Below are positions 8,427 to 64,000 of a stretch of 64,000 nt of DNA, in pieces; the stretch's first letter is position 1; every line of letters begins with the position of its first letter. Source of the DNA: Macrostomum lignano (Eukaryota). A program made the position numbers and the translations under genes. The notes under the pieces were generated by a model that was not told where the DNA came from, ran no database searches, and worked only from the letters and a program-made list of their open reading frames with translations. Where the stretch lies: contig NIVC01000374.1 of the NCBI GenBank assembly GCA_002269645.1, forward strand, positions 372,001-436,000, read 5' to 3'.

Positions 8427-8436
<10 letters not shown>
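8279..8436 (-). CDS. CCDC81: CCDC81 probable exon 5 (acceptor inside a GACA microsatellite)
   Basis: Donor CCC G|gtgagt at 8279. The frame [33 protein letters not shown] has C/G-ending codon bias and needs a phase-2 AG, found at cacacag|A (8436). Confidence 0.55.
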
Positions 8437-8914
<478 letters not shown>

Positions 8915-9428
8915 TTCACATAACATAAGCATAGCAGCAGATGTACTGCAGTGACGCACTAGTGAGACAATAACATGGCAAACCACAAGCAATACTGGTA
9001 ATGGATAGTATTGTATAAATAAGAAACTCTCAATATCATCACAGAAATTCCGATCAAAGTGAAGCAAAAATTTTATACAAGTCATGGGTTCGGATTGATT
9101 GTGCGATAGCTTTGAAAGCCGAATAAACGCAAAGATAAGTGCCTGACACAGTTGTGAATTTGCCATAACAGTATTATCTATAAGCCGCTCCTTGAGTCAA
9201 CTCACGAATCGAGGCAGCCATTGAAAATCTAAGCTCGCATCCAAAATGCTAGCCTTTTTTCTCTGAAGAACAGAGGACTGAGAAAATTTCGACGTAAAAT
9301 TAAATATTAAGATACATTTTTTCGCAGAGACTACTGATTAGTAACACACTTAGGAAACTACTCTTAATATGTATAAATTATCAATTATGAAAGGATTGAT
9401 TTTGAGTAATCAATCAACTAATACTCAC

Positions 9429-9499: not shown

Positions 9500-9639
9500 C
9501 TGAAAAGATCAGATTCAAATGGTTATGCCATTCAATTTATTCAAGGCTTGTGTGGAACTAAAATAACCGCTGCGATGAAGGGGCATATATCAGACGGCGC
9601 CAGAACCAGCAGCAAAGCTGTTGTTAGGAGGGCACAAAA

Positions 9640-10870
9640 GCTACGTTGAGGGGTCGCGCCAAAGCTACCGTGAGGAGGCGCCAAAGCTACCTTGAGGGGC
9701 ACCAAAGCTGCCTTGAGGAGGCGCCAAAGCTATCTTGAGGGGGCGCCAAAGCTAGCTTGAGGAGGCGCCAAAGCTACTGTGAGGAGGCGCCAAAGCTACC
9801 TTGAGGAGGCGCCAAAGCTACCTTGAGGGGGCGCCAAATCTACCGTGAGGAGGCGCCAAAGCTACCTTGAGGGGCACCAAAGCTGCCTTGAGGAGGCGCC
9901 AAAGCTATCTTGAGGGGGCGCCAAAGCTAGCTTGAGGAGGCGCCAAAGCTACTGTGAGGAGGCGCCAAAGCTACCTTGAGGAGGCGCCAAAGCTACCTTG
10001 AGGGGGCGCCAAATCTACCGTGAGGAGGCGCCAAAGCTACCTTGAGGGGGCGCCAAAGCTACCTTGAGGGGGCGCCAAATCTACCGTGAGGAGGCGCCAA
10101 AGCTACCTTGAGGGGGCGCCAAAGCTATCTTGAGGGGGCGCCAAAGCTACCTTGAGGGGGCGCCAAATCTACCGTGAGGAAGCGCCAAAGCTGCCTTGAG
10201 GAGGCGCCAAAGCTATCTTGAGGGGGCGCCAAAGCTAGCTTGAGGAGGCGCCAAAGCTACTGTGAGGAGGCGCCAAAGCTACTGTGAGGAGGCGCCAAAG
10301 CTACCTTGAGGAGGCGCCAAAGCTACCTTGAGGGGGCGCCAAATCTACCGTGAGGAGGCGCCAAATCTACCTTGAGGAGGCGCCAAAGCTACCTTGAGGG
10401 GGCGCCAAATCTACCGTGAGGAGGCGCCAAAGCTACCGTGAGGAGGCGCCAAAGCTACCTTGAGGGGGCGCCAAAGCTACCTTGAGGGGGCGCCAAATCT
10501 ACCGTGAGGAGGCGCCAAAGCTACCTTGAGGGGGCGCCAAAGCTACTGTGAGGAGGCGCCAAAGCTACTGTGAGGAGGCGCCAAAGCTACCGTGAGGGGG
10601 CGCCAAAGCTACCTTGAGGGGGCGCCAAAGCTACTGTGAGGAGGCGCCAAAGCTACTGTGAGGAGGCGCCAAAGCTACCTTGAGGGGGCGCCAAAGCTAC
10701 CTTGAGGGGGCGCCAAAGCTACCGTGAGGGGGTGCCAAAGCTACCTTGAGGGGGCGCCAAAGCTACCGTGAGGGGGCGCCAAAGCTACCTTGAGGGGGCG
10801 CCAAAGCTACCGTGAGGGGGCGCCAAAGCTAGCTTGAGGGGGCGCCAAAGTTACCGTAAGGAGGCACGGA
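9640..10870. repeat. 22-bp minisatellite (GAGGRGGCGCCAAAGCTACCTT), about 55 copies
   Basis: Direct tandem copies with a few variant units, filling CCDC81 intron 3. Confidence 0.96.
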
Positions 10871-10926
10871 AGCTACCGTGATTTTAAGCTATTAATTCAA
10901 CTTGGGTATAAAAATGTGTTTCGCAC

Positions 10927-11346
10927 CTGCTGCAGCGCCCGAACAACAGTGCCGCTTCGATCCAAGCTATTAACAAAGTCTTTATAGAATTTGAATTTCA
11001 CTCCGCCGCAACGGATCTGCAGGCGGCCAACTCCGCAGAAGACCAGCTCAACGTTGCGCTGCATAGCGATGGACCTGTTCAGAGCGCCGAGAGTCTCGCG
11101 AACGCAAGTCTCAATTTTGTCGCGATCGAAATGTCCAGAAGATTCAACGGACAGAGCGGCATAGTTGAGCTGCACCACGGGCACCGAACCGGTCACGTGA
11201 TACTTAGTCTGGGCGAGGCCGTGCGTCTGACAGATGCGCTCGAATAGCTGAAACACTGGCCGCTGGATGAGCAGGTACTTGGCATTGCCAACGTCCAGCT
11301 TCTTTTGGACGAACGAGAATGTACCGAAGTTGGGAATGTGTACACC
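10927..11346 (-). CDS. CCDC81: CCDC81 exon 3 (HU-like domains)
   Basis: tcttccag|GGT acceptor and CAG|gtgcga donor, 140 codons. GVHIPNFGTFSF..LIQRPVF..FDRDKIETCVRETL..QRNVELVFCGVGRLQIR..KFYKDF matches the CCDC81 N-terminal HU domains. Confidence 0.92.
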
Positions 11347-11430
11347 CTGGAAGATTGACGGAACATGGGCAGATAAGCTAAGCTGTTGTTCGAATAGAAG
11401 AACTAGATTAGAATGACACAAATAACTCAC

Positions 11431-11492
11431 CTTTTGATTTTGCAAATTCTTCTCGATAAATCTGGAGACCGCCTCCCAGATGTGAAATAGAT
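11431..11492 (-). CDS. CCDC81: CCDC81 exon 2
   Basis: tattttag|AT acceptor and AAG|gtgagt donor. Encodes DLFHIWEAVSRFIEKNLQNQK (cf. IW.SVSRFIEKQL). Confidence 0.88.
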
Positions 11493-12376
11493 CTAAAATA
11501 GTAGCAACAAATATCATTTTGCTTTTTTTCGTTCTCTTTTTAAATATATATACAAAAAGTAATTTTTGTACGAGTAAACGATACTTTGTTGTTTATTAAA
11601 AATGAAATAAGTTATAATCATATTTTGCATAAAAAGTCTCTAACTCTATTACTATAAATATTAGCTTAAAGGATAGTTTTACATAATTTTCAGAATCCCA
11701 GTATTTTTATAACAAAAGAACGATGTGGATTGAGAAAGTGACTGCATCCAATTTTCATTTATATATGATATTCGGCATCGGCATAATATGTTTAATTTTA
11801 GTTCGTTTGCATTTTATTACCTGCATAGTTTACCTGTAAAGAATAGGAAAATACTTATATGAAAATAAAATTATACTAGAAATTTTTAGTTAAAAAAGTT
11901 GAAAACTAAATAAAGTATACGACCCTAATTTTTGATGGATACAATGGTGGTCTATTAGTACTAAAATGTCTTTATAAGTCTTTGAAAACTAAAGTGGAAC
12001 AGAAAGTTCTGTTGGGCTTGTGAAAACATTTAAACATATTAAATTTGTCTATCGTTTCGATAAATTAAAATACTCTTTCTATGTGTCATATTTAATTAAC
12101 TTTATTTAAGTCCAAGATTTCTCGCCACTGTATTAATAACCATACACTATAAATCTAAAGAATAATACAGAATCTTTAATGTTTTTTATATTTCCCTAAT
12201 TATAACTCAACTCAACATTATAACAACTACAAATCATTTATAGTCTTTAATTTTACATAACTTATCGGCTTTTAGTGCCTTTAATATATTCCATTTCAAC
12301 GTAATTATGTATCAGATGCAACGAAATCATCCAGCTTCAAGATACGTAAACCTGAAAAAACGCTGGATCGACCTAC

Positions 12377-23395: not shown

Positions 23396-23921
23396 ATTCC
23401 TACTCAAAAAAGAATTCGCGTAAAAGTGCTGCGGTTAGAAATCCTACAATAGTTTAAGTATTTCACAGATTATTTTCAATTTTAATGTTTTAAGACATCA
23501 GCATTGAGTTAGATTTTCCTTTTCTCAATTCACTATTAGAAGAGGCTATGCAGTTCGTGAAGCCCACTCAACTTACTTCCGTTCTACTCAAGTAAGGCAC
23601 TTGAAAAACGGAGCTTATATGCGATATCGTTCAAGTGCTAGCAAACAGCCATGAAGATATTAGCTTTACAGTGAATGCTTACATTGAAAGCCTGTTAAAC
23701 TTTTAGAATGCATTGACATACACGCAACAAGAAATTGTAGTCATCATCTACATCTCCATTGGCTGACCAATGAAAACAGAACGCAGAATCTTATATTTAA
23801 TGGCGGACAAGCAGTGACGAGCAGAAACTTGCTGCATATTTTGTAAATTAGTTTCAAATCTTATTTAAAAACACCAAAACTAATCAATTACTAAGAGGTC
23901 CAACGTTGTTAAAAGTAGGAA

Positions 23922-23970
23922 ATGATTGGGAAGACTAATTTTCTGGTCGCTTTGATCTGCATAGCTGCAG
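23922..23970 (+). CDS. Secreted prepropeptide (candidate neuropeptide precursor), exon 1: signal peptide
   Basis: ATG, MIGKTNFLVALICIAA, then G|gtaagt (consensus donor, phase 1). Confidence 0.8.
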
Positions 23971-24065
23971 GTAAGTTAGTCTGTTTTGCGGCGATATATT
24001 TTGCTAATTAATTTAATACGCAATTTTTGCCTGCGAGACAATTGATAATCAAGCTACTTTTCCAG

Positions 24066-24496
24066 GAATTGCAATTCTGCCTGGCAGCTTTGGAGCCCCG
24101 GAGGTCGAATGGAGCTCGAGCAAGTTCAGCAACGAAGGAGAGTTCAGGAATGACAAGCGAATCCTCAGGGATCCCATGATTGACAAGAGAATCCTCAGGG
24201 ATCCCATGATTGACAAGAGAATCCTCAGGGATCCCATGATTGACAAGAGAATCCGCAGGGATCCCATGATTGACAAGAGAATCCTCAGGGATCCCATGAT
24301 TGACAAGAGAATCCTCAGGGATCCCATGATTGACAAGAGAATCCTCAGGGATCCCATGATCGACAAGAGAATCCTCAGGGATCCCATGATCGACAAGAGA
24401 ATCCTCAGGGATCCCATGATTGACAAGAGAATCCTCAGGGATCCCATGATCGACAAGAAGAGCTTTACCACGGACAACCAGGAACGCAATGATTAA
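24066..24496 (+). CDS. Secreted prepropeptide (candidate neuropeptide precursor), exon 2: 10 KR-flanked I(L/R)RDPMID copies
   Basis: Acceptor ctacttttccag|GA (phase 1, 95-nt intron). Gives GIAILPGSFG-APEVEWSSSKFSNEGEFRNDKR(ILRDPMIDKR)n...ILRDPMIDKKSFTTDNQERND*, 159 aa in total. Confidence 0.8.
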
Positions 24497-25622
24497 AAGC
24501 CGCATGTAAGCAGCAAGTGATGGAGCACCTGTCCAATGACTCATTCTAAGCGCGGTTAAGCAACAAACTACCCCATGTCCTACAATACGCTTTAGCTGAC
24601 TAATATAATTACTTTGCTAATAAGACTAAAGGTACATCCGTACGAAAAAATACATATTGGCAAATCTTATCAATTATCAGAACAACAAGCAACTAAAACT
24701 ATTGTTGTAGCTGGTTGGACCTGTTTACGATTTTTTCGCCTTCTATAATCTATAGCTATGTAAGAAAATCTGCGCTCAGTTTCAAGAATGCTGTACATGG
24801 AGTTTTTTGTTGACATCATTGATAAAAAGATTGCTTGATTTAAGAAAAGAACCATCAAATTAGGATTAATAATCCCTACTGCATGCTTTATTACGAGTAT
24901 ATAGCGTTTTTCATTTTACTTTTTTTCATTTCATTAGTTAGATTAGAACATATAGTACTTTCTTTGGGAAGTAGCCTCTGGGTCTGTCCGATCAAAGACG
25001 GATCAAGGAAGCGTTGGTGAATTGGGACGGGAGGAGGGCGTCGGCGGTTTCAAAGTTGATCTCGCGAACGAGCTATTCGCGAAGTTGCCAAGTGATCAAA
25101 CACTAGCTTGCTAAATTGGAAAAAATGGTGACAAAAATCGAAGGAAATGCGACAAGCAGGAACGTAAGACTGCAAGGAATCAATAAGGTAGGACGCCTGA
25201 AGAAGTTTATGGCCGTTCATTTGTCGCAGCATGGAACAGGATCGTTCGGTTGTGAATGTCTATTAAATAACGCACGGTTTAATCTTCAAAGACAGGTAAG
25301 GTTGTGCCATGGACTACTAAAAGCTACCGACGTAAAATACGCAATCATGCTATAATAAATTGATAAACTATATTCGTAGACTTCCAAGACGCGAAGGCCG
25401 CAAAGTCAACCCAAAAACGGTCTACTCTCCCGACAAAAACGGTACCTAGGCCAAGAAGTGTCCCAGAGACGTTGCAGGTAAATAGGAAAGAAACGACTCT
25501 AAAACGACTCCGAACGCTTCTATAACAAGTCATTTTAGTGACTCTGGGGGTGTAGATTCGTATCTGAGGCGCGCCAGTCGCTGTAGAATCACTGAGTTGC
25601 GTCTGAAGCGCATCTGCGTCAC

Positions 25623-28672: not shown

Positions 28673-28673
<1 letters not shown>

Positions 28674-28740
<67 letters not shown>

Positions 28741-28781
28741 CACAGACAGACAGACAGACAGAGAGACAGACAGACAGACAC

Positions 28782-28818
<37 letters not shown>

Positions 28819-28865
28819 GAGACACACAGACAGACAGACAGACAGAGAGACAGACAGACAGACAC

Positions 28866-28962
<97 letters not shown>

Positions 28963-29010
28963 GAGACAGACAGACAGACAGACACACAGACAGACAGGCA
29001 GACAGAGAGA
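28674..29010. repeat. (GACA)n microsatellite
   Basis: Direct reading. Confidence 0.97.
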
Positions 29011-29217
29011 CAAACAAGCAGGTAGGCACTATAACAGGACCAGACAGGTTCCCAAATACAGGCAAACTGACACTAAGAATGAATGATAAAAAAGACCCGC
29101 AGACAGCACAACAAATACAAGAAGACAAGCGCCAAGACACAGAGACAAGCAGACACTGTTGGACCCACACAGGCGAAACGAAATTAAATGTAACCAGACG
29201 TTTCTAGATTCCTAGAT

Positions 29218-29556
29218 TCACCGAGCTTTCTTAGAACTAGAACCCTGCGAAACGCCCTCAGGACTGGCGCTGGACGCTCCGCCGCCAAGACCGTAGCTGG
29301 ATGACTTGCGGATTTCAGTGACGCCAATGAGCTTTCTGGCACCGTAGGACATGAAAACCAATAGCAGGACAAATAGACAGCAGTTCAGCTTAGACTGGAC
29401 AATGTAAGGCAATACGAAGACTGCAAACACTAGGATGGACCAGGCCAACCAGATCAGATAGGCGGTGATGTCTTTGTTACGGCGAGCCAAATGCATATCG
29501 GTGGCCGCTTGGTCTGGGAACTGGCCGTGCTTGAAGTAGTAATCCAGGGCGTCGTC
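29218..29556 (-). CDS. AGPAT3/4: 1-acylglycerol-3-phosphate O-acyltransferase (AGPAT3/4, LPAAT gamma/delta-like), exon 3
   Basis: gatacttcag|GAC acceptor. Two hydrophobic segments, then RKLIGVTEIRKSSSYG (cf. RRLIGVTEI.KGSSYG) and a C-terminal KKAR* KKxx ER-retrieval signal. Confidence 0.92.
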   Translation of the reverse strand, partial: DDALDYYFKHGQFPDQAATDMHLARRNKDITAYLIWLAWSILVFAVFVLPYIVQSKLNCCLFVLLLVFMSYGARKLIGVTEIRKSSSYGLGGGASSASPEGVSQGSSSKKAR

Positions 29557-29619
29557 CTGAAGTATCACAAATTTAATTATTCATAGAGAGTTAGGTAACT
29601 GGCGGTGAACATCAAAGCT

Positions 29620-30270
29620 TGAATTTGAATACCTGGGTTAGGGGAATGGCGGCAATTGACTTTGAATACCTAGGGTGGAGGAATGGCGGTAATTGACTTT
29701 GAATACCTAGGGTGGAGGAATGGCGGTAATTGACTTTGAATACCTGGGGTGGAGGAATGGCGGTAATTAGCTTTGAATACCTGGGGTGGAGGAATGGCGG
29801 TAATTAGCTTTGAATACCTGGGGTGGAGGAATGGCGGTAATTAGCTTTGAATACCTGGGGTGGAGGAATGGCAGTAATTAGCTTTGAATACCTGGGGTGG
29901 AGGAATGGCGGTAATTAGCTTTGAATACCTGGGGTGGAGGAATGGCAGTAATTAGCTTTGAACACCTGGGGTGGGGGGCATGGCAGTAATTAGCTTTGAA
30001 TACCTGGGGTGGGGCATGGCAGCAATTAGCTTTGAACACCTGGGGTGGAGGAATGGCGGTAATTAGCTTTGAATACCTGGGGTGGAGGAATGGCGGTAAT
30101 TAGCTTTGAATACCTGGGGTGGGGGCATGGCAGCAATTAGCTTTGAACACCTGGGGTGGAGGAATGGCGGTAATTGACTTTGAATACCTGGGGTGGAGGA
30201 ATGGCGGTAATTAGCTTTGAATACCTGGGTGGGGGGAATGGCGGTAATTAGCTTTGAATACCTAGGGTGG
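29620..30270. repeat. 37-bp minisatellite (TTGAATACCTGGGGTGGAGGAATGGCGGTAATTAGCT) in AGPAT intron 2
   Basis: About 17 tandem copies; variants include CG>CA. Confidence 0.95.
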
Positions 30271-30453
30271 GGCATGGGGGCAGTTAGTTTTTTATATAAG
30301 AAAAAACTGCCTACTAGGCCTAGGGGAGTCTCTTCACAACACTGAAATTTTCTAGAGGGATTCTAATTGGGGATTGATACCGGGATGAAGAGATCTCTAA
30401 TTATGGACCAATGTTAGATTAAGTGATTTCTAATCAGGAGACTTTTTACTGAC

Positions 30454-30954
30454 CTTTTTCTTATAGAGATCGAACAGCCATTTCGAGCACTCCGCGTCGT
30501 CGCTGGGCACATCGTCCAGGGGGATTCGCTCGCAAAGGAAGTCAGCCCGACAGGGACGGCCATTCAAGGCAGCCATCATAGTTGGATCCTCGCCTGCTGG
30601 CACGGCCAGGGTCATATCGTAGATGCAGGAGGCGCGGCCTTTCAGAGACTGCAACAGCAGAATGAAGCCGCGAGTGCGCGGCAGCAGAAGGTGCCGCATT
30701 GGAGAGAGGCCTTTGGCGGCGGCGACTTCGTTGCATGCGGCCAGTTTGGCCTCGGTGAACCTGGTGCCCTCGGGGAAGAACAGCACGCTGACCGGGTGCT
30801 CCTTCGGGTAGGAGATCATCTCCTTGGAGTGGTACTCCAGTACTCGACGGTCGTGATCGAGGTTTCTAGATAGGAACATGCACTCGGTGAAGTAGAAGGA
30901 CCAGCCGATGATGGGGATGAACTTTAGCACCTTCTTGCCCACCATCTTGGAGCT
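30454..30954 (-). CDS. AGPAT3/4: AGPAT3/4-like acyltransferase, exon 2
   Basis: cccccgcag|AGC acceptor and AAG|gtcagt donor. Contains the acyltransferase motifs KFIPIIGW, FFPEGTRFT and LLPRTRGF. Confidence 0.95.
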
Positions 30955-31034
30955 CTGCGGGGGAAAAAGGGGAGATCAAATTCAAGTAATTTTTGAGTTG
31001 TTTGGGGTTGCCTGTCGAGCTGGCCAGCAACAGA

Positions 31035-31565
31035 AATTTATGAGGCTGGCTCAGCAACTGGGGATCTGGGAGGCTGGCCCAGCAACTGACACTCTGGGAG
31101 GCTGGCTCAGCAACTGGGGATCTGGGAGGCTGGCCCAGCAACTGACACTCTGGGAGGCTGGCCCAGCAACTGAGAATCTGAAAGGCTGGCCCAGCAACTG
31201 GGGATCTGGGAGGCTGGCCCAGCAACTGAGGATCTGGGAGGCTGGCTCAGCAACTGAGGATCTGGGAGGCTGGCCCAGCAACTGAGAATCTGAAAGGCTG
31301 GCCCAGCAACTGAGGATCTGGGAGGCTGGCTCAGCAACTGAGGATCTGGGAGGCTGGCCCAGCAACTGAGAATCTGAAAGGCTGGCCCAGCAACTGAGGA
31401 TCTGGGAGGCTGGCCCAGCAACTGAGAATCTGAAAGGCTGGCCCAGCAACTGAGGATCTGGGAGGCTGGCTCAGCAACTGAGGATCTGGGAGGCTGGCCC
31501 AGCAACTGAGAATCTGAAAGGCTGGCCCAGCAACTGAGGATCTGGGAGGCTGGCCCAGCAACTGG
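31035..31565. repeat. 28-29-bp minisatellite (GATCTGGGAGGCTGGCCCAGCAACTGAG) in AGPAT intron 1
   Basis: About 18 tandem copies; source of the spurious ORF extensions. Confidence 0.95.
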
Positions 31566-31610
31566 AATTAGAAAGTTTTGGCCACACGCACCAGCACCCA
31601 GTTCGCTCAC

Positions 31611-31955
31611 CCCAAGCATTCCCAGGCGTTCAACAGCGCACCAGCCGAGCATCCAGTCCGTCTCGTAGCGATGATTCATAATCACAATACTGTGCTCGGT
31701 GCCCAGGTGAGGCACCTGCTCAGGCCGCACAAACATACGAATTTTACTGTTAGCATACCATTGCGACAGCATAGTAAACTGGCACCAGATTTGGAAGGCC
31801 AGCCATGAATTGAGCTTTCTATAAAGCCAGCGACTAAATGGCCAAACTAGCAGAGTGAGCAGTTGAAGAAAATTCACAGTCAGGCCAATAACTAGAAAGC
31901 CCCAGATCAACAGGATGTGAACTGGGGGTAGGCGCTTCCACCAACTGCCGGGCAT
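31611..31955 (-). CDS. AGPAT3/4: AGPAT3/4-like acyltransferase, exon 1
   Basis: ATG at 31955, N-terminal TM segment, catalytic NHRYETD (HX4D) motif, and GGG|gtgagc donor. The spliced product is 394 aa. Confidence 0.95.
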
Positions 31956-37595: not shown

Positions 37596-37745
37596 GTAAC
37601 TCATCGAACATCGGGCTCTTCTCTTATTGGCTAACAGGGGTAGGAGAAATAATGACTCATCGAACATCGGGCTCTTCTCTCATTGGCTAACAGGGGTAGG
37701 AGAAATAATGACTCATCGAACATAGGGCCCTTCTCTCATTGGCTA
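37596..37745. repeat. 56-bp tandem repeat x3 containing TGACTCA and ATTGG
   Basis: GACTCATCGAACATCGGGCTCTTCTCTCATTGGCTAACAGGGGTAGGAGAAATAAT units. Confidence 0.88.
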
Positions 37746-37834
37746 ACGGGCGTGGGCCAGTTAGTAGGGATTAGAGAAAAAGTGAACCATTGAACGCTAT
37801 GTGTTCTCTTATTGGCTGTAAACTATAAACTGAC

Positions 37835-38189: not shown

Positions 38190-38390
38190 ATGACTCATCC
38201 AGCGATCGCTGATTGGCTGACGCAGATAAAAGAGAATTTATGACTCATCCAGCAATGCTTATCGCTGATTGGTTGACGCAGATACAAGAGAATTCATGAC
38301 TCATCCAGCAATGCTTATCGCTGATTGGCTGACACAAATAGAAGATAATTAATGATTCATCCAGCAATGTTTATCTCTGATTGGCGGACA
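38190..38390. repeat. Tandem repeat of about 50-55 bp x4 containing TGACTCA and GATTGG
   Basis: TGACTCATCCAGCAATGCTTATCGCTGATTGGCTGACGCAGATA.AAGAGAATT units. Confidence 0.85.
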
Positions 38391-38582
38391 CAGAAGAAAA
38401 TTAGGAAAAAAACTGTTAGTGAGGCTCATCGTGATTGGATACAGCTAAATATGGTTGTAGAATCAACAGTATGATCGAGTACTTTAGCAGCTCTGCAGTA
38501 ATTTAACAATTTCGTATACTTGTTGCTAATTAGCAGCTTAGCATGGTTGAATACCATTGCAGATATTCCAGCTCGGACTTAC

Positions 38583-42247: not shown

Positions 42248-42284
<37 letters not shown>

Positions 42285-42287
42285 CTA

Positions 42288-42328
<41 letters not shown>

Positions 42329-42337
42329 CACAGATAA

Positions 42338-42408
<71 letters not shown>

Positions 42409-42419
42409 CTAAGACACTA

Positions 42420-42488
<69 letters not shown>

Positions 42489-42543
42489 CACAGATAAACA
42501 GACAGACAGACACACAGACAGACAGACACTAAGACAGACACTA

Positions 42544-42588
<45 letters not shown>

Positions 42589-42612
42589 GGCAGACAGACA
42601 GACAGACAGACA
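42247..42612. repeat. (GACA)n microsatellite
   Basis: Direct reading. Confidence 0.97.
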
Positions 42613-43437
42613 GCAATGGCAGAGATAATTAAGGGCACCTTAGCTAGACAACTAATTCACTTTCTAACTATCAGGGAGGAGAATTTTATTTTTTTAATTT
42701 TTAATCTCATACTTTCAGCTAACTCCAGGATGTTGGACGGTCATATCCCTTAGAAACAAAGCTAAGCGTGAAAAAAGACCAGTGCGGCGGAAACACCTGT
42801 ATAGTTGTGTTCTCTTATCACCTCTCGCTCACCTGTCCATCTATGAGTATCACTCTTTTACATTGTTCTCGAAAGCTAGAAAAAACATACATTTAGTATA
42901 CGATGAAAATTTTTTAGCCAAGCAAGCGCGTGTGGAGCATGAGCTTCCATTGTTTAAAACTTTTCGGGTTTTTTGAAACGATGCATGCATCAGCGCTGCA
43001 GGGCAGAGGGCGGGGGGCTCTGAACCGGAGTCTGGAGTGACAACTCCGAGAGACAAGCATAGGCTGAAAAGCTTAACTAAAAAAGCTTCAGGTAGCCTAT
43101 ACAGTTGTCAGTTCAAGTCTCTGGTTCCTGGTCTCCTTGACTAAGGTTACCCCCAGACTTTGTCTCCATCTTGCTTGCATTGTTTAGCTGGCAGTATGCT
43201 TGGCAAATTACTTGCAGTTCAACTTTTAGCCTACGAGTAGCTAGTCTAGAGCGTCTTGTCGAGACAATGACTTTCATGGCCTTGCCATTCTTTAACTTTA
43301 AAGGCTGAGAATAGGAAGGAGTTTTTTCACTTCTTCAAAGTTTAACTGAAGGGTTGCTAAGCTACCTACAGCCTGAGCGTGTTGAAGGAAACTTAAAATG
43401 AGGGTGGATTTGGGTATGTAGACAGTCTTGCAAGCAG

Positions 43438-45955: not shown

Positions 45956-46540
45956 ATGCAGCAGCAGCAGCAGCAGACAAACTTAAAACGCACCGTTCGG
46001 GTCAGATTTTATCGCAACGGCGACTCGCACTATTCGGGATTCCAGATGGCCTTGACTGCAGAGCGCTATCGAACATTCGAAGCACTGCTGGACGACCTGA
46101 CCCGAGGCCCGGTGTGCAATCGCAACGTCCTGCCGCAGGGAGTTCGATACCTGTTCGAGGCGCAGACAGGTAGACGAGTTCGAGGTTTGCAAGATTTTAT
46201 CGAAGGCGGCAGCTACGTGTGCGCTTCGTTTGAGCAGCTGAAGAAGCTGAATTATGGAGCTGCTGCTGCTAAAAAGCAGAAGGCTGCCAATGGAAATGGC
46301 CCGCAGCAGCAGCTGCCAGCAGCTCCGTCATCTTCAGCATCCGCATCGGCTGCAACTCGAGGCCGCATCGCCGTGATTCTGCCCGGCGGCGGGGTGCCGA
46401 GGCCACGCCGCCCAGCTCGAGTCCTGCTCAACAGTCGGACGGCGAAATCGTTCGACAGAGTGATGGCCGACATCAGTCAGGCTGCCCGACTGCCCGGCGG
46501 AGCTGTCAGACGGCTGTATAGATTGGATGACAGGAGACTG
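45956..46540 (+). CDS. Doublecortin-domain protein (DCX/DCLK-like, no kinase), exon 1
   Basis: VRFYRNGDSHYSG..RYRTFEALLDDLT..LPQGVRYLF..GGSYVCASFE is DC domain 1. RVLLNSRTAKSFDRVMADIS..GAVRRLYRLD begins DC domain 2. Donor CTG|gtgagt. Confidence 0.92.
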
Positions 46541-47462
46541 GTGAGTGAAACCCCTTGGAGTGAAACCCCTTGGGAGTGAAACCCCTTGGGAGTGAAACCC
46601 CTTGGGAGTGAAACCCCTTGGGAGTGAAACCCCTTGGAGTGAAACCCCTTGGCAGTAAAACCCTTTGGGAGTGAAACCCCTGGGAGTGAAACCCCTGGGA
46701 GTGAAAACCCTGGGAGTGAAACCCCTGGGAGTGAAACCCCTGGGAGTGAAACCCCTGGGAGTGAAACCCTCTGGAATGAAACTCCTTGGGAGTGAAACCC
46801 CTTGAGACTGAAGCCCCTTGGGAGTGAAACCCTCTGGAGTGAAACTCCTTGGGAGTGAAACCCCTGGGAGTGAAACCCTTTGGAGTGAAACCCTTTGGAG
46901 TGAAACCCTTTGGAGTGAAACCCTTTGGAGTGAAACCCTTTGGAGTGAAACCCTTTGGAGTGAAACCCTTTGGAGTGAAACCCTTTGGAGTGAAACCCTT
47001 TGGAGTGAAACCCTTTGGAGTGAAACCCTTTGGAGTGAAACCCTTTGGAGTGAAACCCTTTGGAGTGAAACCCTTTGGAGTGAAACCCTTTGGAGTGAAA
47101 CCCTTTGGAGTGAAACCCTTTGGAGTGAAACCCTTTGGAGTGAAACCCTTTGGAGTGAAACCCTTTGGAGTGAAACCCTTTGGAGTGAAACCCTTTGGAG
47201 TGAAACCCTTTGGAGTGAAACCCTTTGGAGTGAAACCCTTTGGAGTGAAACCCTTTGGAGTGAAACCCTTTGGAGTGAAACCCTTTGGAGTGAAACCCTT
47301 TGGAGTGAAACCCTTTGGAGTGAAACCCTTTGGAGTGAAACCCTTTGGAGTGAAACCCTTTGGAGTGAAACCCTTTGGAGTGAAACCCTTTGGAGTGAAA
47401 CCCTTTGGAGTGAAACCCTTTGGAGTGAAACCCTTTGGAGTGAAACCCTTTGGAGTGAAACT
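46541..47462. repeat. 15-bp minisatellite (GGAGTGAAACCCTTT) starting at the DCX intron-1 donor
   Basis: About 60 copies, highly homogeneous in the right two thirds. Confidence 0.97.
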
Positions 47463-56578: not shown

Positions 56579-59224
56579 ATTTGATGACCCATTATCTTCT
56601 CCTCATATCCTTCGGCATTATCTATCTTCACTTTAGAAAAGATCTCATGTTGGAATTAAAATATTCAACTGTTGCAGCTAAAAACTGGCATTTTAGCTGC
56701 TAACTTTCTCTAGAGAAATCGTATTCGTTTCCATTTTACTGAGCACGTCTGCACTCAATCATAAAACGCTATAAGTTTGTCAAACTATTCTGTTTATTTT
56801 TCCGCTTGGATAGGCGGGCGGGACAACTGCCTTGTCCCATAGCTATTATAGTTTGCTAACATTATAGCCTGAGTTAGCTTTAATTTGTCATTTTTGCCCC
56901 ACCACAATGCACTGCAGTAAGCCGTGTCTCTAACTGAACTAACACAAGAGTAACTGGTTTCTCCTTTTTCGTCTTGCTTGATAACTTTTGTTATGCTCTG
57001 CAAAAGGCTCACCGAAGCGAAACGATGATACGCAGTCACCGTGAGAGCTCTCTTTCTCTCTCCATCTCTGTCCTAGCAGTGAGCAGTAAAGCGAGTGAAG
57101 ATTTATCAATTGTACAGCAGTAGCAGCTTAGAATTATCTTTTTGGAATTCAGAGTCTGCTTTGAGAGGTATTTTCTGTTTTCTCTGTAGCGTCGAGTCAG
57201 CGGATGGGTATAGTAAAGCATTCGAGAGAAGGGGGGGGGTTTATGATACCTGTCTAATTGCGACCGCTTCGTTGATTTCACCGCGTGAGCCTCGCGAAAC
57301 TTACCTTTCTCTTTCTCTCTCGCTTCTCAACTTCCATGATAAGAAATAAAGAGCGCGAACTTTTGCTTACCTGGGTGAGCAATTAAAATTTAAAAAATTA
57401 GATAGACATCTAGTCGGCGTCTTTGTGGCTTCTTAATGCAATAAAACTGCAGAGTTTTTATAGCTTATCATAATTTTTATGATTGCACAAATACGCAATC
57501 AGGAATAGCAAGACAAAATGTTAATTTGCTTTCTTGAAACTTTTTTTATGGTGACTCCAACAATGATGGGGGTTCTACGTGCACTGAAGTTTATTTATTC
57601 CAACATTACCCAAGAGTTTTAAATCTATGTAGCTGGAATTTGAAAGCTCATACGATGAGATATCGGGCAATAATTCAATTTAGATGGACAGAAAAAGTGC
57701 CGCAAGACTTCAGTGTTCTTAAATCTCTTTGTATGAATACATAAAATTTCATAATCCATATTATAGATCTAGAACCCCATGGACAATTGGAAAAGTGTCA
57801 CAATCCAGATGTTACATCTGGAACTCCATGGATAGTTAATAAAGGGGTGTCACAGTCCAGATTTTATTAGAACTAGGACTCCTCTCAGATATCAGATCTA
57901 GAGCTCCATGGGTGGCTAAGGCGTTGGCAATTTCCAATTTTGAAAGCTCGAAAAGTGAAGTCCCATCCCAGACTCAACAATTTAGTACTCCATGGCTAAA
58001 TAGCAATTCACAAGAGCCCTCTCAATTTGTGAGTCACACACGCACACTTGCAAATTGCAACGGTAAACAACTATACAGGTAAGATTTTTAATTAGGACTT
58101 GACAGAACCGGCACAACTCTCAGGATAAGGGACAGCCGCAGGCATGCTCAATCCAAAATAATGACGATTGTGTTCTCAGAACACGCGAGTAGCGTGGAGT
58201 AAATTTTTTTTTGGGGGGGGGGCTACTCAAGTAGCTCTTGAGCACTGTATACTACATAAGTGTAGTAGACCTCTAAGTAGCGTCTGGGCCCGCTTATTTC
58301 AAGAGACATGTAAGTTCTCAGTGCTATACAAGGATAGCAATAGCACACTGAGCCAGTTTGGCCCCACCTGCGTTGGTGGTCTGAGTCGGGGACTCTAGCT
58401 GGTGCCATCTAATTAAGAGAATCAAGGTGCAGCATCTGCTTGAACCGCAAGCCCACTAATTGCTATAATTGCTCGGCCATCTACCGCCGCGTGCAGAAAT
58501 TCAGATTAGCGGACCAGAATAGCCTGCTCTGAGAGACTGAGCGAGCAGCAGTGCTTTGCCCCCCACGAGCAACATGTTGCACGCAGAGATAATGGAGCAC
58601 TGTTCGCATCTTACATGCGCTCTGGGAGTTCGGCTTAATAAGGGCATGCCCAGCTAGAGAATTTCTTTTCTTTCAGCAAAGTTTCCGGGGCTTTTAGTGC
58701 AGTAAAAGTAAGCGATGAAAGATTTGTGTTCATATCGAACAAGTGTGTGCTCAAATTTCGGACATATATTCTCAAATTTCGGACAAATATGCTTAAATTA
58801 AGGATGGTTGTGCTAAAATATCATTACAAAATTCTCCACACAAAAGGCACAGCGGCTTGAAATAAAATGTGACTAATATGTTTACCGCATATTAAGGTTC
58901 GAGCAAGCCAGCTCGTACATAAGTTCGTCAACAAGTTCAGTCAGCCCAGTTGGCTGCCTTCGAGCTGCAGCCCAGCACACAAAGCCATATAAAAGCCATT
59001 AAGGCGCAGCTGTTTCCCACGATTTCGCGCTTGCGTATTGGCTCAAATTTAGACAATAAATAAAAGAATCAGAGCGCCAAGCTTGATGTCACAATGCAGT
59101 GAGCGGCCCCCAAAATGATAAAAACGGTTTATTAGCTGGACGGAATATTCACCTTATAACAGTTTTTGTGTGTTTAAGTGTAGTGAAATTCGCGTCTCTC
59201 GGAGGCTTTTAAAGCTTTCTTTTA

Positions 59225-61612
<2,388 letters not shown>

Positions 61613-61815
61613 CTTCTCTAACGCTGCTAACTTTGCATCTATAGGCACTCAGGCAATCCCTCTAACTCATCTAATGGCGCCCCCTCTGGCGCCTCTGCTT
61701 CTGTCACCTTAACAGACACCAACGGCTACCATCCTACCAATAAAAATTCTTTAAATCCATCCCTAACCTCAGCCTGCACGAAAGTTATATTCGATCATGA
61801 ACCATGTTTGCTCAC

Positions 61816-63769: not shown

Positions 63770-63965
<196 letters not shown>

Positions 63966-64000
63966 AGTCTATCTACTATTCTACCACACATTGCTACGCC

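What the first reader, a model, noticed from the sequence alone, without database searches (positions are those of the whole stretch)
23922..24496. Hidden two-exon neuropeptide-type precursor releasing ten copies of ILRDPMID
Seen: what looks like another 30-bp minisatellite is in frame with an upstream micro-exon (ATG 23922, G|gtaagt, 95-nt intron, ttttccag|). The 159-aa product has a signal peptide (MIGKTNFLVALICIAAGIAILPGSFG|AP; small residues at -3/-1), a spacer, nine ILRDPMID and one IRRDPMID each bounded by KR (the last by KK), and an acidic tail. Variation between copies is mostly silent (ATT/ATC, CGA/AGA) and all dibasic sites are kept. Knowledge: signal peptide plus tandem KR-flanked copies is the classic prohormone-convertase substrate layout; no Gly precedes KR, so the peptides would be non-amidated. 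Inference: a secreted signalling peptide family I do not recognise; the D-P-hydrophobic core loosely recalls flatworm xDPM/xDPI secreted peptides and pedal-peptide/orcokinin-type peptides. The ORF track misses the signal exon.
Basis: partly seen in the sequence, partly recalled or inferred. Interest (0 to 1): 0.86.

Follow-up and report, generated by a model that had tools for sequence, protein, structure and literature searches.

The report
Flatworm secreted ten-copy peptide precursor gene
This is a real but uncharacterised two-exon gene of the flatworm Macrostomum lignano, already in GenBank as a "hypothetical protein"; it encodes a secreted precursor built to release about ten copies of the short peptide ILRDPMID, probably a signalling peptide, with no expression or peptide evidence yet.

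Summary
ATG 23922, a 49-nt exon, a 95-nt GTAAGT...TTTTCCAG intron and exon 24066-24496 give a 159-aa product. It has a signal-peptide-like N-terminus, a spacer, nine ILRDPMID and one IRRDPMID copies each preceded by KR, then KK and a tail.

The window is Macrostomum lignano contig NIVC01000374.1. The gene is not hidden. GenBank holds it as BOX15_Mlig021643g1 (PAA84435.1, hypothetical protein), from an RNA-seq-derived annotation. That model has the same start, exon-1 junction and stop, but only 3 repeat copies, which looks like collapse of the transcript assembly.

Two further syntenic loci carry 12 and 11 copies. Of the 33 units, 30 encode the identical peptide.

No homologue was found outside M. 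lignano; a HMMER scan of 1.84 billion proteins returned only repeat noise.

The closest known layout is trematode npp-26 (planarian spp-15). Those precursors hold KR-flanked, non-amidated xYFDPIxF octapeptides that are confirmed by mass spectrometry and expressed in neurons. The peptide resemblance (a D-P-[I/M] core) is not statistically secure, and the defining aromatic residues are absent.

Verdict: a new member of a known kind (convertase-type multi-copy peptide precursor). Neuronal versus glandular expression and the actual products (ILRDPMID or DPMID) are untested. Interest is moderate.

The parts
23757..23871 (+). Possible core promoter: inverted CCAAT pair (CCATTGG 23757-23763, CCAAT 23767-23771) and TATA-like runs (TATATTTAA 23792-23800; TTATTTAAAAA 23861-23871, 51-61 nt before the ATG)
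   Evidence: Read directly from the sequence. This is inference only; no transcription-start data were available. The last 130 nt before the ATG differ at only 2 positions between the window locus and L002/L003.
23922..23970 (+). Exon 1 (coding part): ATG plus the first 16 1/3 codons (MIGKTNFLVALICIAA-G), covering the n-region and most of the hydrophobic core of the signal peptide
   Evidence: The start is identical to GenBank protein PAA84435.1 / P0001. The exon is conserved at L002/L003 with one replacement, G3W.
23971..24065 (+). Intron, 95 nt, phase 1, GTAAGT...TTTTCCAG
   Evidence: The annotated protein reads CIAAGIAILPG across this junction. The intron has the same length at all three loci, with 1 substitution. 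GT-AG polarity fixes the + strand.
24066..24094 (+). End of the signal peptide (GIAILPGSFG); predicted signal-peptidase site after G26 (SFG|AP)
   Evidence: Hydropathy and the -3/-1 rule. SignalP was not run.
24095..24154 (+). Spacer propeptide APEVEWSSSKFSNEGEFRND (20 aa, acidic)
   Evidence: It is identical at all three loci.
24155..24454 (+). Ten 30-nt units, each encoding KR + octapeptide (9 x ILRDPMID; unit 4, at 24245-24274, encodes IRRDPMID)
   Evidence: The same array has 12 and 11 units at L002/L003.
24455..24496 (+). Final KK site, C-terminal tail SFTTDNQERND and TAA stop
   Evidence: The stop is the same as in the GenBank model. There is one replacement (F>Y) at L002/L003.
24497..24625 (+). 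Probable 3' UTR with only variant poly(A)-like hexamers (AATATA 24602, AATAAG 24619); the end of the UTR is not determined
   Evidence: No canonical AATAAA lies within 800 nt. This is inference only.

Best explanation
An expressed, lineage-restricted Macrostomum lignano gene (BOX15_Mlig021643g1) encodes a 159-aa secretory multi-copy peptide precursor.

Proposed mechanism:
1. The spliced mRNA is translated into the ER, and the 26-residue signal peptide is removed (inferred).
2. In the regulated secretory pathway, a dibasic-specific subtilisin-like convertase (PC2/PC1-type) cuts after each Lys-Arg and after the final Lys-Lys. The sites lack the P4 Arg that furin prefers (inferred).
3. A carboxypeptidase E-like enzyme trims the basic residues (inferred).
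4. The products are about ten copies of the free-acid octapeptide ILRDPMID (monoisotopic 971.51 Da, net charge -1), one spacer peptide and one tail peptide.

A second cut at R-I-L-R|D (an R-x-x-R motif) could instead give DPMID.

The released peptide most likely acts as an extracellular signal, either a neuropeptide or a peptide hormone. This is by analogy with the identically laid-out flatworm npp-26/spp-15 precursors.

Shown: gene structure, transcript-derived model, layout, and conservation in three loci.
Inferred: secretion, cleavage, the identity of the products, cell type and function.
For: Gene and transcript:
- The sequence anatomy is confirmed.
- The GenBank model PAA84435.1 has the same ATG, exon-1 junction and stop. 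That annotation was built only from RNA-seq and transcript assemblies plus TransDecoder (PMC5730564).
- The window is contig NIVC01000374.1, positions 372001-436000.

Conservation:
- Three syntenic loci, each with an AGPAT-like acyltransferase downstream, keep the exon, the 95-nt intron, the frame, all KR sites and the tail. They carry 10, 12 and 11 units.
- 30 of the 33 units encode the identical octapeptide. The two silent variants occupy 13 units; the two replacement variants occupy 3.
- This is the only array in the window with a dibasic pair in every unit of an open frame.

Processing machinery and precedent:
- M. lignano has an essential PC2 homologue expressed in the nervous system (PMC4490696).
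- Trematode npp-26 precursors (P0152-P0154) have the same plan: a signal exon, then a second exon with a spacer and KR-flanked 8-aa non-amidated peptides at a 10-aa period.
- The npp-26 peptides were seen by LC-MS/MS as free acids (PMC9495596), and the gene marks a neuron cluster (PMC11349301).
Against: - No expression pattern, junction-read count or peptide detection could be retrieved. The supplements of seven M. lignano papers do not mention Mlig021643 or Mlig009070.
- No homologue was found outside M. lignano, so there is no deep conservation to argue for function.
- Comparison of the loci gives no signal of purifying selection. The unique CDS has 2 substitutions in 180 nt, both replacements, against 1.2-2.3% in the flanks.
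- There are only four variable sites in the repeats.
- KR is always followed by Ile. From my own knowledge (Veenstra 2000, insect precursors), KR followed by an aliphatic residue is an ambiguous cleavage site. Aplysia ELH is, as I recall, a KR|I counter-example.
- The genome is full of minisatellites (65 TRF rows in 64 kb), and the array itself behaves like one. L002 and L003 have identical flanks but different arrays.
Confidence: 0.6

Rival explanations
1. The precursor and its processing are the same, but it is made by non-neuronal gland cells (for example prostate/seminal-fluid, pharyngeal, rhabdite or other epidermal glands). The peptide would then be released to the outside or into the partner as a pheromone, an allohormone or a defensive or ejaculate peptide, rather than acting as a neuropeptide.
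For: - The layout only shows that the protein is secreted and cut at dibasic sites; it does not identify the cell type.
- The gene is lineage-restricted, and its copy number varies quickly. Both are typical of fast-evolving reproductive or exocrine products.
- The peptide is acidic and non-amidated.
Against: - The gene is absent from the supplements held for the tail-specific/seminal-fluid screen and for the lists of reproduction-related genes. This is weak evidence, because the files are partial and use other identifiers.
- The sites are purely dibasic, without a furin-type P4 Arg. That points to regulated-pathway convertases, which are best known from neuroendocrine cells.
- The nearest analogue, npp-26, is neuronal.
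Confidence: 0.2
2. A young or non-functional ORF: a transcribed minisatellite that happens to lie in frame behind a leader exon. It would be translated little or not at all, with no selected peptide function.
For: - The genome is extremely rich in minisatellites.
- Three of the six frames are open across the array, as in other arrays.
- No homologues were found anywhere.
- There is no measurable purifying selection between the loci.
- Array length changes while the flanks stay identical.
Against: - A consensus signal peptide, consensus splice sites, a Kozak A at -3, a KR in every one of 33 units and a clean KK plus tail ending are an improbable coincidence.
- Replacement variants are confined to 3 of 33 units, while silent variants have spread to 13.
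- The structure is retained at all three loci, across about 1-2% divergence.
Confidence: 0.1
3. A secreted repetitive protein that is not cleaved: a ~14 kDa charged, intrinsically disordered secretory product, such as a matrix, mucus or adhesive component.
For: - KR followed by Ile is a sub-optimal or ambiguous convertase site (my own knowledge).
- Pfam gives only a sub-threshold, repeat-driven match to Extensin_1 (24 bits against a cut-off of 105).
Against: - A strict KR every 10 residues, plus a terminal KK, is the hallmark of processing.
- The equivalent npp-26 sites are cleaved in vivo.
- The protein has no Cys, Gly/Pro-rich or glycosylation-rich features typical of structural secretions.
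Confidence: 0.07
4. The real product is one of the minus-strand ORFs across the array: 24008-24544, 178 aa, ...(N/D)HGIPEDSLV repeats; or 24049-24489, 146 aa, LSIMGSLRIL repeats.
For: Both minus-strand frames are open, and the 178-aa ORF starts with an ATG followed by a hydrophobic stretch.
Against: - The annotated intron is GT-AG only on the + strand, and the transcript-derived CDS is on the + strand.
- The minus-strand ORFs run into the intron sequence.
- They have no processing sites, and the ATT/ATC variant is a replacement (N/D) in the 178-aa frame.
Confidence: 0.02

Closest known systems
Trematode npp-26 (Sm-npp-26 = Smp_071050; Sj and Paragonimus orthologues) and planarian spp-15 (FDPIMF/FDPIQF-amide)
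   Same: - Same phylum.
- A precursor of about 135-160 aa.
- A two-exon gene with a signal-peptide exon; the spacer and all peptide copies lie in exon 2.
- Tandem KR-flanked peptides at a 10-residue period.
- Octapeptides with D-P at positions 4-5 followed by I/M and an aliphatic residue.
- In trematodes there is no Gly before KR, and the peptides are free acids confirmed by LC-MS/MS.

   Different: - The aromatic residues that define the family (F3 and F/Y8 of xYFDPIxF) are R and D here, which reverses the charge.
- There is no similarity outside the repeats.
- The intron is phase 1 inside the hydrophobic core here, but phase 0 at the signal-cleavage site in Schistosoma.
- There are 10-12 near-identical copies here, against 5-6 diverged copies.
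- The unit-level similarity has p about 0.008 (random octapeptide) or 0.03 (permutation) before correction for the many families that could have been compared. The BLASTP E-values of about 1e-8 are inflated by the periodicity.
Generic metazoan multi-copy neuropeptide prohormones (for example FMRFamide-related, orcokinin/pedal-peptide or myomodulin precursors)
   Same: A signal peptide, then a spacer, then tandem dibasic-flanked copies. Processing by PC2/PC1 and carboxypeptidase E is implied.
   Different: - There is no amidation signal.
- The peptide is much shorter than pedal/orcokinin peptides and, from my own knowledge, lacks their FD...GF-type motifs.
- No Pfam neuropeptide family matches.
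Fungal Kex2-processed repeat proteins and yeast alpha-factor precursors
   Same: This is how the precursor would work: a secreted precursor with many KR-bounded copies of one short peptide, whose copy number varies between loci or alleles.
   Different: This is an animal genome (M. lignano), with no fungal ancestry and no EA/DA spacer dipeptides. The resemblance is an analogy only.
MERC marine metatranscriptome protein P0090 (ERR1712130_690379)
   Same: KR-flanked octapeptides Y[LV]RDDTIE at a 10-residue period, 47% identical to the ILRDPMID array in register.
   Different: - The organism is unknown.
- The sequence is a fragment without a signal peptide and has a long unrelated C-terminus.
- The similarity (p about 3e-4 to 1e-3 per unit) is not significant for the best pick out of 1.84 billion proteins.
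- A follow-up profile search found nothing.

Membership tests
Convertase-processed multi-copy secretory peptide precursor (prohormone layout) | N-terminal cleavable signal peptide | tested here: met
   Judged from anatomy only: K4 in the n-region, a hydrophobic core at residues 6-21 (mean Kyte-Doolittle hydropathy up to 3.3), a P-G break, and S(-3)/G(-1) before A27. SignalP was not available.
Convertase-processed multi-copy secretory peptide precursor (prohormone layout) | Several peptide copies, each bounded by dibasic sites | tested here: met
   Ten KR sites plus a terminal KK in the window. KR is retained in all 33 units across the three loci.
Convertase-processed multi-copy secretory peptide precursor (prohormone layout) | Transcribed and spliced as predicted | tested here: met
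   The evidence is indirect. The GenBank models PAA84435.1 and PAA77719.1/PAA79507.1 carry the junction ...CIAAG|IAILPG..., and they come from an annotation based only on RNA-seq and transcripts. Junction reads themselves could not be inspected.
Convertase-processed multi-copy secretory peptide precursor (prohormone layout) | Processing enzymes present in the organism | tested here: met
   From the literature: a PC2 homologue (RNA815_2403.2) is expressed in the nervous system and is essential (PMC4490696).
Convertase-processed multi-copy secretory peptide precursor (prohormone layout) | Mature peptides detectable; expression in neurons or secretory cells | not testable with these tools
   No peptidomic or in situ data for this gene were found. 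Full-text searches for ILRDPMID, Mlig021643 and Mlig009070 gave nothing, and neither did seven supplement searches.
Flatworm npp-26 / spp-15 (FDPIxF/Y peptides) | Peptide motif F-D-P-I-x-[F/Y], with aromatic residues before D-P and at the C-terminus | tested here: not met
   ILRDPMID shares only the D-P-[I/M]-aliphatic core. The positions equivalent to F3 and F/Y8 are R and D.
Flatworm npp-26 / spp-15 (FDPIxF/Y peptides) | Precursor layout: signal peptide, spacer, and KR-flanked ~8-aa peptides at a 10-aa period; non-amidated in trematodes | tested here: met
   P0152 and P0153 compared with the 159-aa product.
Flatworm npp-26 / spp-15 (FDPIxF/Y peptides) | Sequence similarity beyond chance, or outside the repeats | tested here: inconclusive
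   - Unit score 6.3: p = 0.008 against random octapeptides and 0.028 against permutations, both uncorrected.
- No convincing alignment of the N-terminal region.
- npp-26 is not among the top 150 HMMER hits.
Flatworm npp-26 / spp-15 (FDPIxF/Y peptides) | Shared intron position | tested here: inconclusive
   Both are two-exon genes with a signal-peptide exon. The intron is phase 1, ten residues before the cleavage site, in M. lignano. It is phase 0, at the cleavage site, in Schistosoma.
Pedal peptide / orcokinin-type precursors | Longer (about 12-20 aa) peptides with conserved N-terminal xFD and C-terminal hydrophobic/aromatic motifs | not tested
   This was judged only by inspection, from my own knowledge of the motifs: an 8-aa peptide with no FD or GF motif. 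No Pfam neuropeptide family matched. I do not file the gene here.

The most novel reading that the evidence does not exclude
ILRDPMID would be the founding member of a Macrostomum-restricted signalling-peptide family. It could have arisen recently, or it could be the highly diverged macrostomid version of the flatworm 'D-P core' npp-26/spp-15 family. Its peptide dose would be set by minisatellite-type expansion and contraction of the coding array: 10, 11 and 12 copies at the three loci of this neopolyploid, with two loci differing in their arrays while their flanks are identical. That would make it a tractable case of peptide-gene evolution by tandem-repeat dynamics in a transgenic model flatworm.
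Probability: 0.2. Interest if true: 0.55.

Novelty: new member of a known kind. Interest (0 to 1): 0.4.

Why it matters
M. lignano is the one flatworm with routine transgenesis. I found no catalogue of its non-amidated peptides in the papers I could search. A well-defined orphan precursor with a single, easily synthesised peptide is a practical entry point for peptidomics, receptor deorphanisation and RNAi.

The case also shows a practical annotation problem. Short-read transcript assemblies collapse coding minisatellites, so the public protein records (89 and 99 aa, 3-4 copies) under-report the genomic precursors (159-179 aa, 10-12 copies).

If the link to npp-26/spp-15 were confirmed, that family would reach back to the base of the Rhabditophora. 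Otherwise this is one more lineage-specific prohormone-like gene, of moderate interest.

Tried and rejected
- Word-indexed homology search with the full precursor found only the M. lignano cluster itself.
- A full HMMER scan of 1.84 billion representative proteins gave 623 hits. Those I read (the sub-400-aa hits plus matched stretches of about 20 hits, including the best-scoring) were decamer-repeat noise (EEPVV-type and similar), and in the table only one hit besides P0001 itself extends into the first 23 residues of the query (P0100, an EEPV-type repeat protein).
- The best look-alike, P0090, was followed up and judged not significant.
- Pfam gave only sub-threshold, repeat-driven matches.
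- Rfam and tRNA scans of the window found nothing.
- Literature searches for the peptide and both gene identifiers found nothing.
- Supplement searches in seven M. lignano papers found no occurrence.
- McVeigh 2009 (PMC2749192) is not held. Koziol 2016 is known to me only through a citation and I did not try to fetch it, so I cannot exclude that either lists this gene.
- The test for selection between loci has too little divergence to say anything.
- An intron inside the array, which would explain the 3-copy annotated protein, is rejected. The 30-nt unit contains no GT, so no canonical intron is possible. Collapse of the transcript assembly, or a mapping gap, is the likely cause.
- Tandem paralogues in the window or in the flanks of the other loci: none.
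- A fungal Kex2-repeat or RiPP precursor was considered from the layout and rejected once the organism was identified as a flatworm.

Full report
**What is in the sequence**

An ATG at 23922 has A at -3 and follows in-frame TAA and TAG stops. It opens a 49-nt exon ending CAG|GTAAGT. A 95-nt intron ends TTTTCCAG|G at 24065. Exon 2 runs from 24066 to the TAA at 24494-24496.

The spliced CDS is 480 nt and encodes 159 aa:
- MIGKTNFLVALICIAAGIAILPGSFG|APEVEWSSSKFSNEGEFRND
- ten 30-nt units encoding KR plus an octapeptide (nine ILRDPMID; unit 4 is IRRDPMID)
- KK-SFTTDNQERND

TRF reports the array at 24151-24458 with period 30, 10.3 copies and 97% matches.

The N-terminus has the anatomy of a cleavable signal peptide: a basic n-region, a hydrophobic core of about 16 residues, a Pro-Gly break, and Ser at -3 and Gly at -1. 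SignalP could not be run.

**Is it more than chance?**

The window holds 65 TRF rows, so a 30-nt array is unremarkable in itself. An open frame is also not evidence. Three of the six frames are open across this array, and other arrays whose period is a multiple of three have open frames too.

The combination is what is improbable:
- It is the only array with a dibasic pair in every unit of an open frame.
- It is joined by consensus splice sites to an ATG-initiated hydrophobic leader.
- It ends cleanly in KK plus a short tail.

**Where it comes from, and whether it is hidden**

The precursor matches one protein cluster in 5.8 billion sequences: Macrostomum lignano hypothetical proteins. The window is identical to GenBank contig NIVC01000374.1 of assembly Mlig_3_7, with window position 1 equal to contig position 372001.

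Interval 23922-24496 is exactly the annotated gene BOX15_Mlig021643g1. Its product PAA84435.1 (89 aa) has the same start, the same sequence across the exon-1 junction and the same tail, but only three ILRDPMID copies.

That annotation was built only from RNA-seq (StringTie/TACO), a de novo transcriptome and TransDecoder (PMC5730564). The model is therefore indirect transcript evidence for the + strand and for the 23970/24066 junction.

The missing 210 nt (seven units) cannot be a real intron, because the unit contains no GT. The likely cause is a short-read transcript assembly that collapsed the repeat.

So the gene is not hidden, but its public protein record is truncated and unnamed.

**Paralogous loci**

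The cluster's second member (99 aa; BOX15_Mlig009070g1/g2) led to two further loci, L002 and L003.
- Both are syntenic with the window; an AGPAT-like acyltransferase lies about 4.3-4.7 kb downstream on the opposite strand.
- Both keep exon 1, the 95-nt intron, the frame and the tail.
- They carry 12 and 11 units.

Across the 33 units there are four variable sites:
- two silent (AGA/CGA in each first unit; ATT/ATC in 10 units)
- two replacements (L>R in one unit; P>L in one unit shared by L002 and L003)

As a result, 30 of 33 predicted peptides are identical. This fits constraint on the peptide, but four events carry no statistical weight.

Between the window locus and L002, the unique CDS has 2 substitutions in 180 nt, both replacements (G3W, F150Y). 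The flanks differ by 1.2-2.3%, so selection cannot be tested at this divergence.

L002 and L003 have identical flanks but different arrays. Either the array evolves like a minisatellite, or the assemblies differ in the repeat.

**Search for relatives**

A full HMMER scan of 1.84 billion representative proteins returned 623 hits. Those I read were unrelated decamer-repeat proteins, and in the table only one hit besides the M. lignano protein itself reaches into the first 23 residues of the query, an EEPV-type repeat protein.

The most similar unit is KR-Y[LV]RDDTIE, in a Tara/MERC metatranscriptome fragment of unknown origin. Its per-unit p-value is about 3e-4 to 1e-3. That is not significant for the best pick from such a library, and a profile search with both arrays found nothing.

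Pfam gave nothing meaningful. No paper in the searchable library contains ILRDPMID or either gene identifier.

Other Macrostomum species are probably not represented in these databases. Absence therefore shows only that no described family matches, not that the gene is species-specific.

**Closest known system**

Planarian spp-15 gives FDPIMF/FDPIQF-amide, and schistosome npp-26 gives xYFDPIxF peptides (PMC2953531). I retrieved the trematode precursors P0152-P0154.

They share the following with the M. lignano product:
- a length of 133-139 aa
- a signal peptide and a spacer
- five or six KR-flanked, non-amidated peptides, mostly octapeptides, at a 10-residue period
- D-P at positions 4-5, followed by Ile and an aliphatic residue

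They are also two-exon genes with a signal-peptide exon. The Sm-npp-26 peptides were detected by LC-MS/MS as free acids (PMC9495596). The gene marks a specific neuron cluster in miracidia (PMC11349301). This shows that this exact layout is processed and neuronal in flatworms.

Membership, however, is not established:
- The defining aromatic residues (F3, F/Y8) are R and D here.
- Nothing outside the repeats aligns convincingly.
- The intron phase and position differ (phase 1 inside the hydrophobic core, against phase 0 at the cleavage site).
- The BLASTP E-values of about 1e-8 are inflated by periodicity.
- At unit level, p is 0.008 against random octapeptides and 0.03 against permutations, before correction for the dozens of families one could compare.

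**Mechanism and its uncertainties**

The most likely course is as follows:
1. Co-translational entry into the ER and removal of the signal peptide.
2. Cleavage after each KR, and after the final KK, by a dibasic-specific convertase. M. lignano has an essential, nervous-system-expressed PC2 homologue (PMC4490696).
3. Trimming of the basic residues by a carboxypeptidase.
4. Release of about ten ILRDPMID free acids (971.51 Da).

From established knowledge of the furin consensus (R-x-[K/R]-R), the KR sites lack a P4 Arg. This points to regulated-pathway convertases rather than constitutive furin.

Two caveats apply:
- KR is always followed by Ile. In insect precursors that is an ambiguous context (Veenstra 2000, my own knowledge), although Aplysia ELH is, as I recall, cut at KR|I.
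- Each unit also contains R-I-L-R|D, an R-x-x-R motif (R-I-R-R in unit 4). The end product could therefore be DPMID.

Cell type and function are wholly inferred. The supplements of seven M. lignano papers were searched without finding the gene.

**Rivals**

- The same precursor made by gland cells, as a pheromone, ejaculate or defensive peptide: 0.2.
- A transcribed minisatellite ORF without a selected function: 0.1.
- An uncleaved secreted repeat protein: 0.07.
- A minus-strand ORF: 0.02. This is contradicted by the GT-AG polarity and by the annotated strand.

**Verdict**

This is a new, lineage-restricted member of a well-known kind of gene, the convertase-type multi-copy peptide precursor. 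It is already present in GenBank as an unnamed and truncated model. It is worth a peptidomics and in situ test, but it is not a surprising finding. Interest 0.4.

Noticed in passing
window 23922-24496; L002 10001-10635; L003 10001-10605: The public protein records for all three loci (89 aa and 99 aa, with 3-4 peptide copies) under-report the genomic arrays (10, 12 and 11 copies). The 99-aa model even has an artificial junction (..NEGE|SMIDKR..). Coding minisatellites seem to be collapsed in this transcript-based annotation.
   Followed up: yes
L002 vs L003 (10001-10635 / 10001-10605 and 1.5 kb flanks): The two loci have no substitutions in about 2.7 kb of flanks. Their arrays still differ by one unit and in which units carry ATC rather than ATT. 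This is either very fast array turnover or assembly uncertainty in the repeat.
   Followed up: partly
window 59222-61648 (-): A minus-strand ORF with C2H2 zinc fingers (Pfam zf-C2H2, E = 5.6e-9) begins inside the 2.1-kb 12/36-nt minisatellite (59526-61611). It reads the repeat in frame as (MPLE/ILLE)n, so this may be another case of a minisatellite inside coding sequence.
   Followed up: partly
window 45956-47461 (+): A doublecortin-domain ORF (Pfam DCX, E = 5e-28) runs straight into a 15-nt minisatellite of about 60 copies (46543-47461). All three minus-strand frames of that array are open.
   Followed up: partly
window 29184-31955 (-): The AGPAT-like acyltransferase gene (Pfam Acyltransferase plus Acyltransf_C) encloses a 28-nt minisatellite (31042-31564). 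It also lies next to a 37-nt minisatellite (29624-30291). An ORF continues from the N-terminal exon into the 28-nt array. The same gene lies downstream of the peptide gene at all three loci.
   Followed up: partly
window 8428-8915, 28673-29016, 42248-42613, 63778-63974: Four long tetranucleotide arrays of the same family ((TCTG)n / (GACA)n / (AGAC)n, 50-118 copies) recur about every 15-20 kb. The window as a whole has 65 TRF rows in 64 kb.
   Followed up: no
window 10897-11517 (-): An ORF with CCDC81 HU domains (Pfam HU-CCDC81_euk_1 and _2, E = 1e-22) lies directly beside a 22-nt minisatellite of 57 copies (9637-10881).
   Followed up: no
P0090 (MERC ERR1712130_690379), residues 1-80: A marine metatranscriptome fragment from an unknown eukaryote has KR-flanked Y[LV]RDDTIE octapeptides at a 10-residue period. 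This is the same layout as the M. lignano array and 47% identical to it, but the similarity is not significant after multiple testing.
   Followed up: yes
window 23757-23771; 37599-37747; 38205-38394: ATTGGCT / CCAAT-type motifs occur as an inverted pair about 150 nt upstream of the peptide gene's ATG. They also occur inside two 56-nt minisatellite units (..CATTGGCTAAC.., ..GATTGGCTGAC..). Whether they have promoter function is unknown.
   Followed up: no
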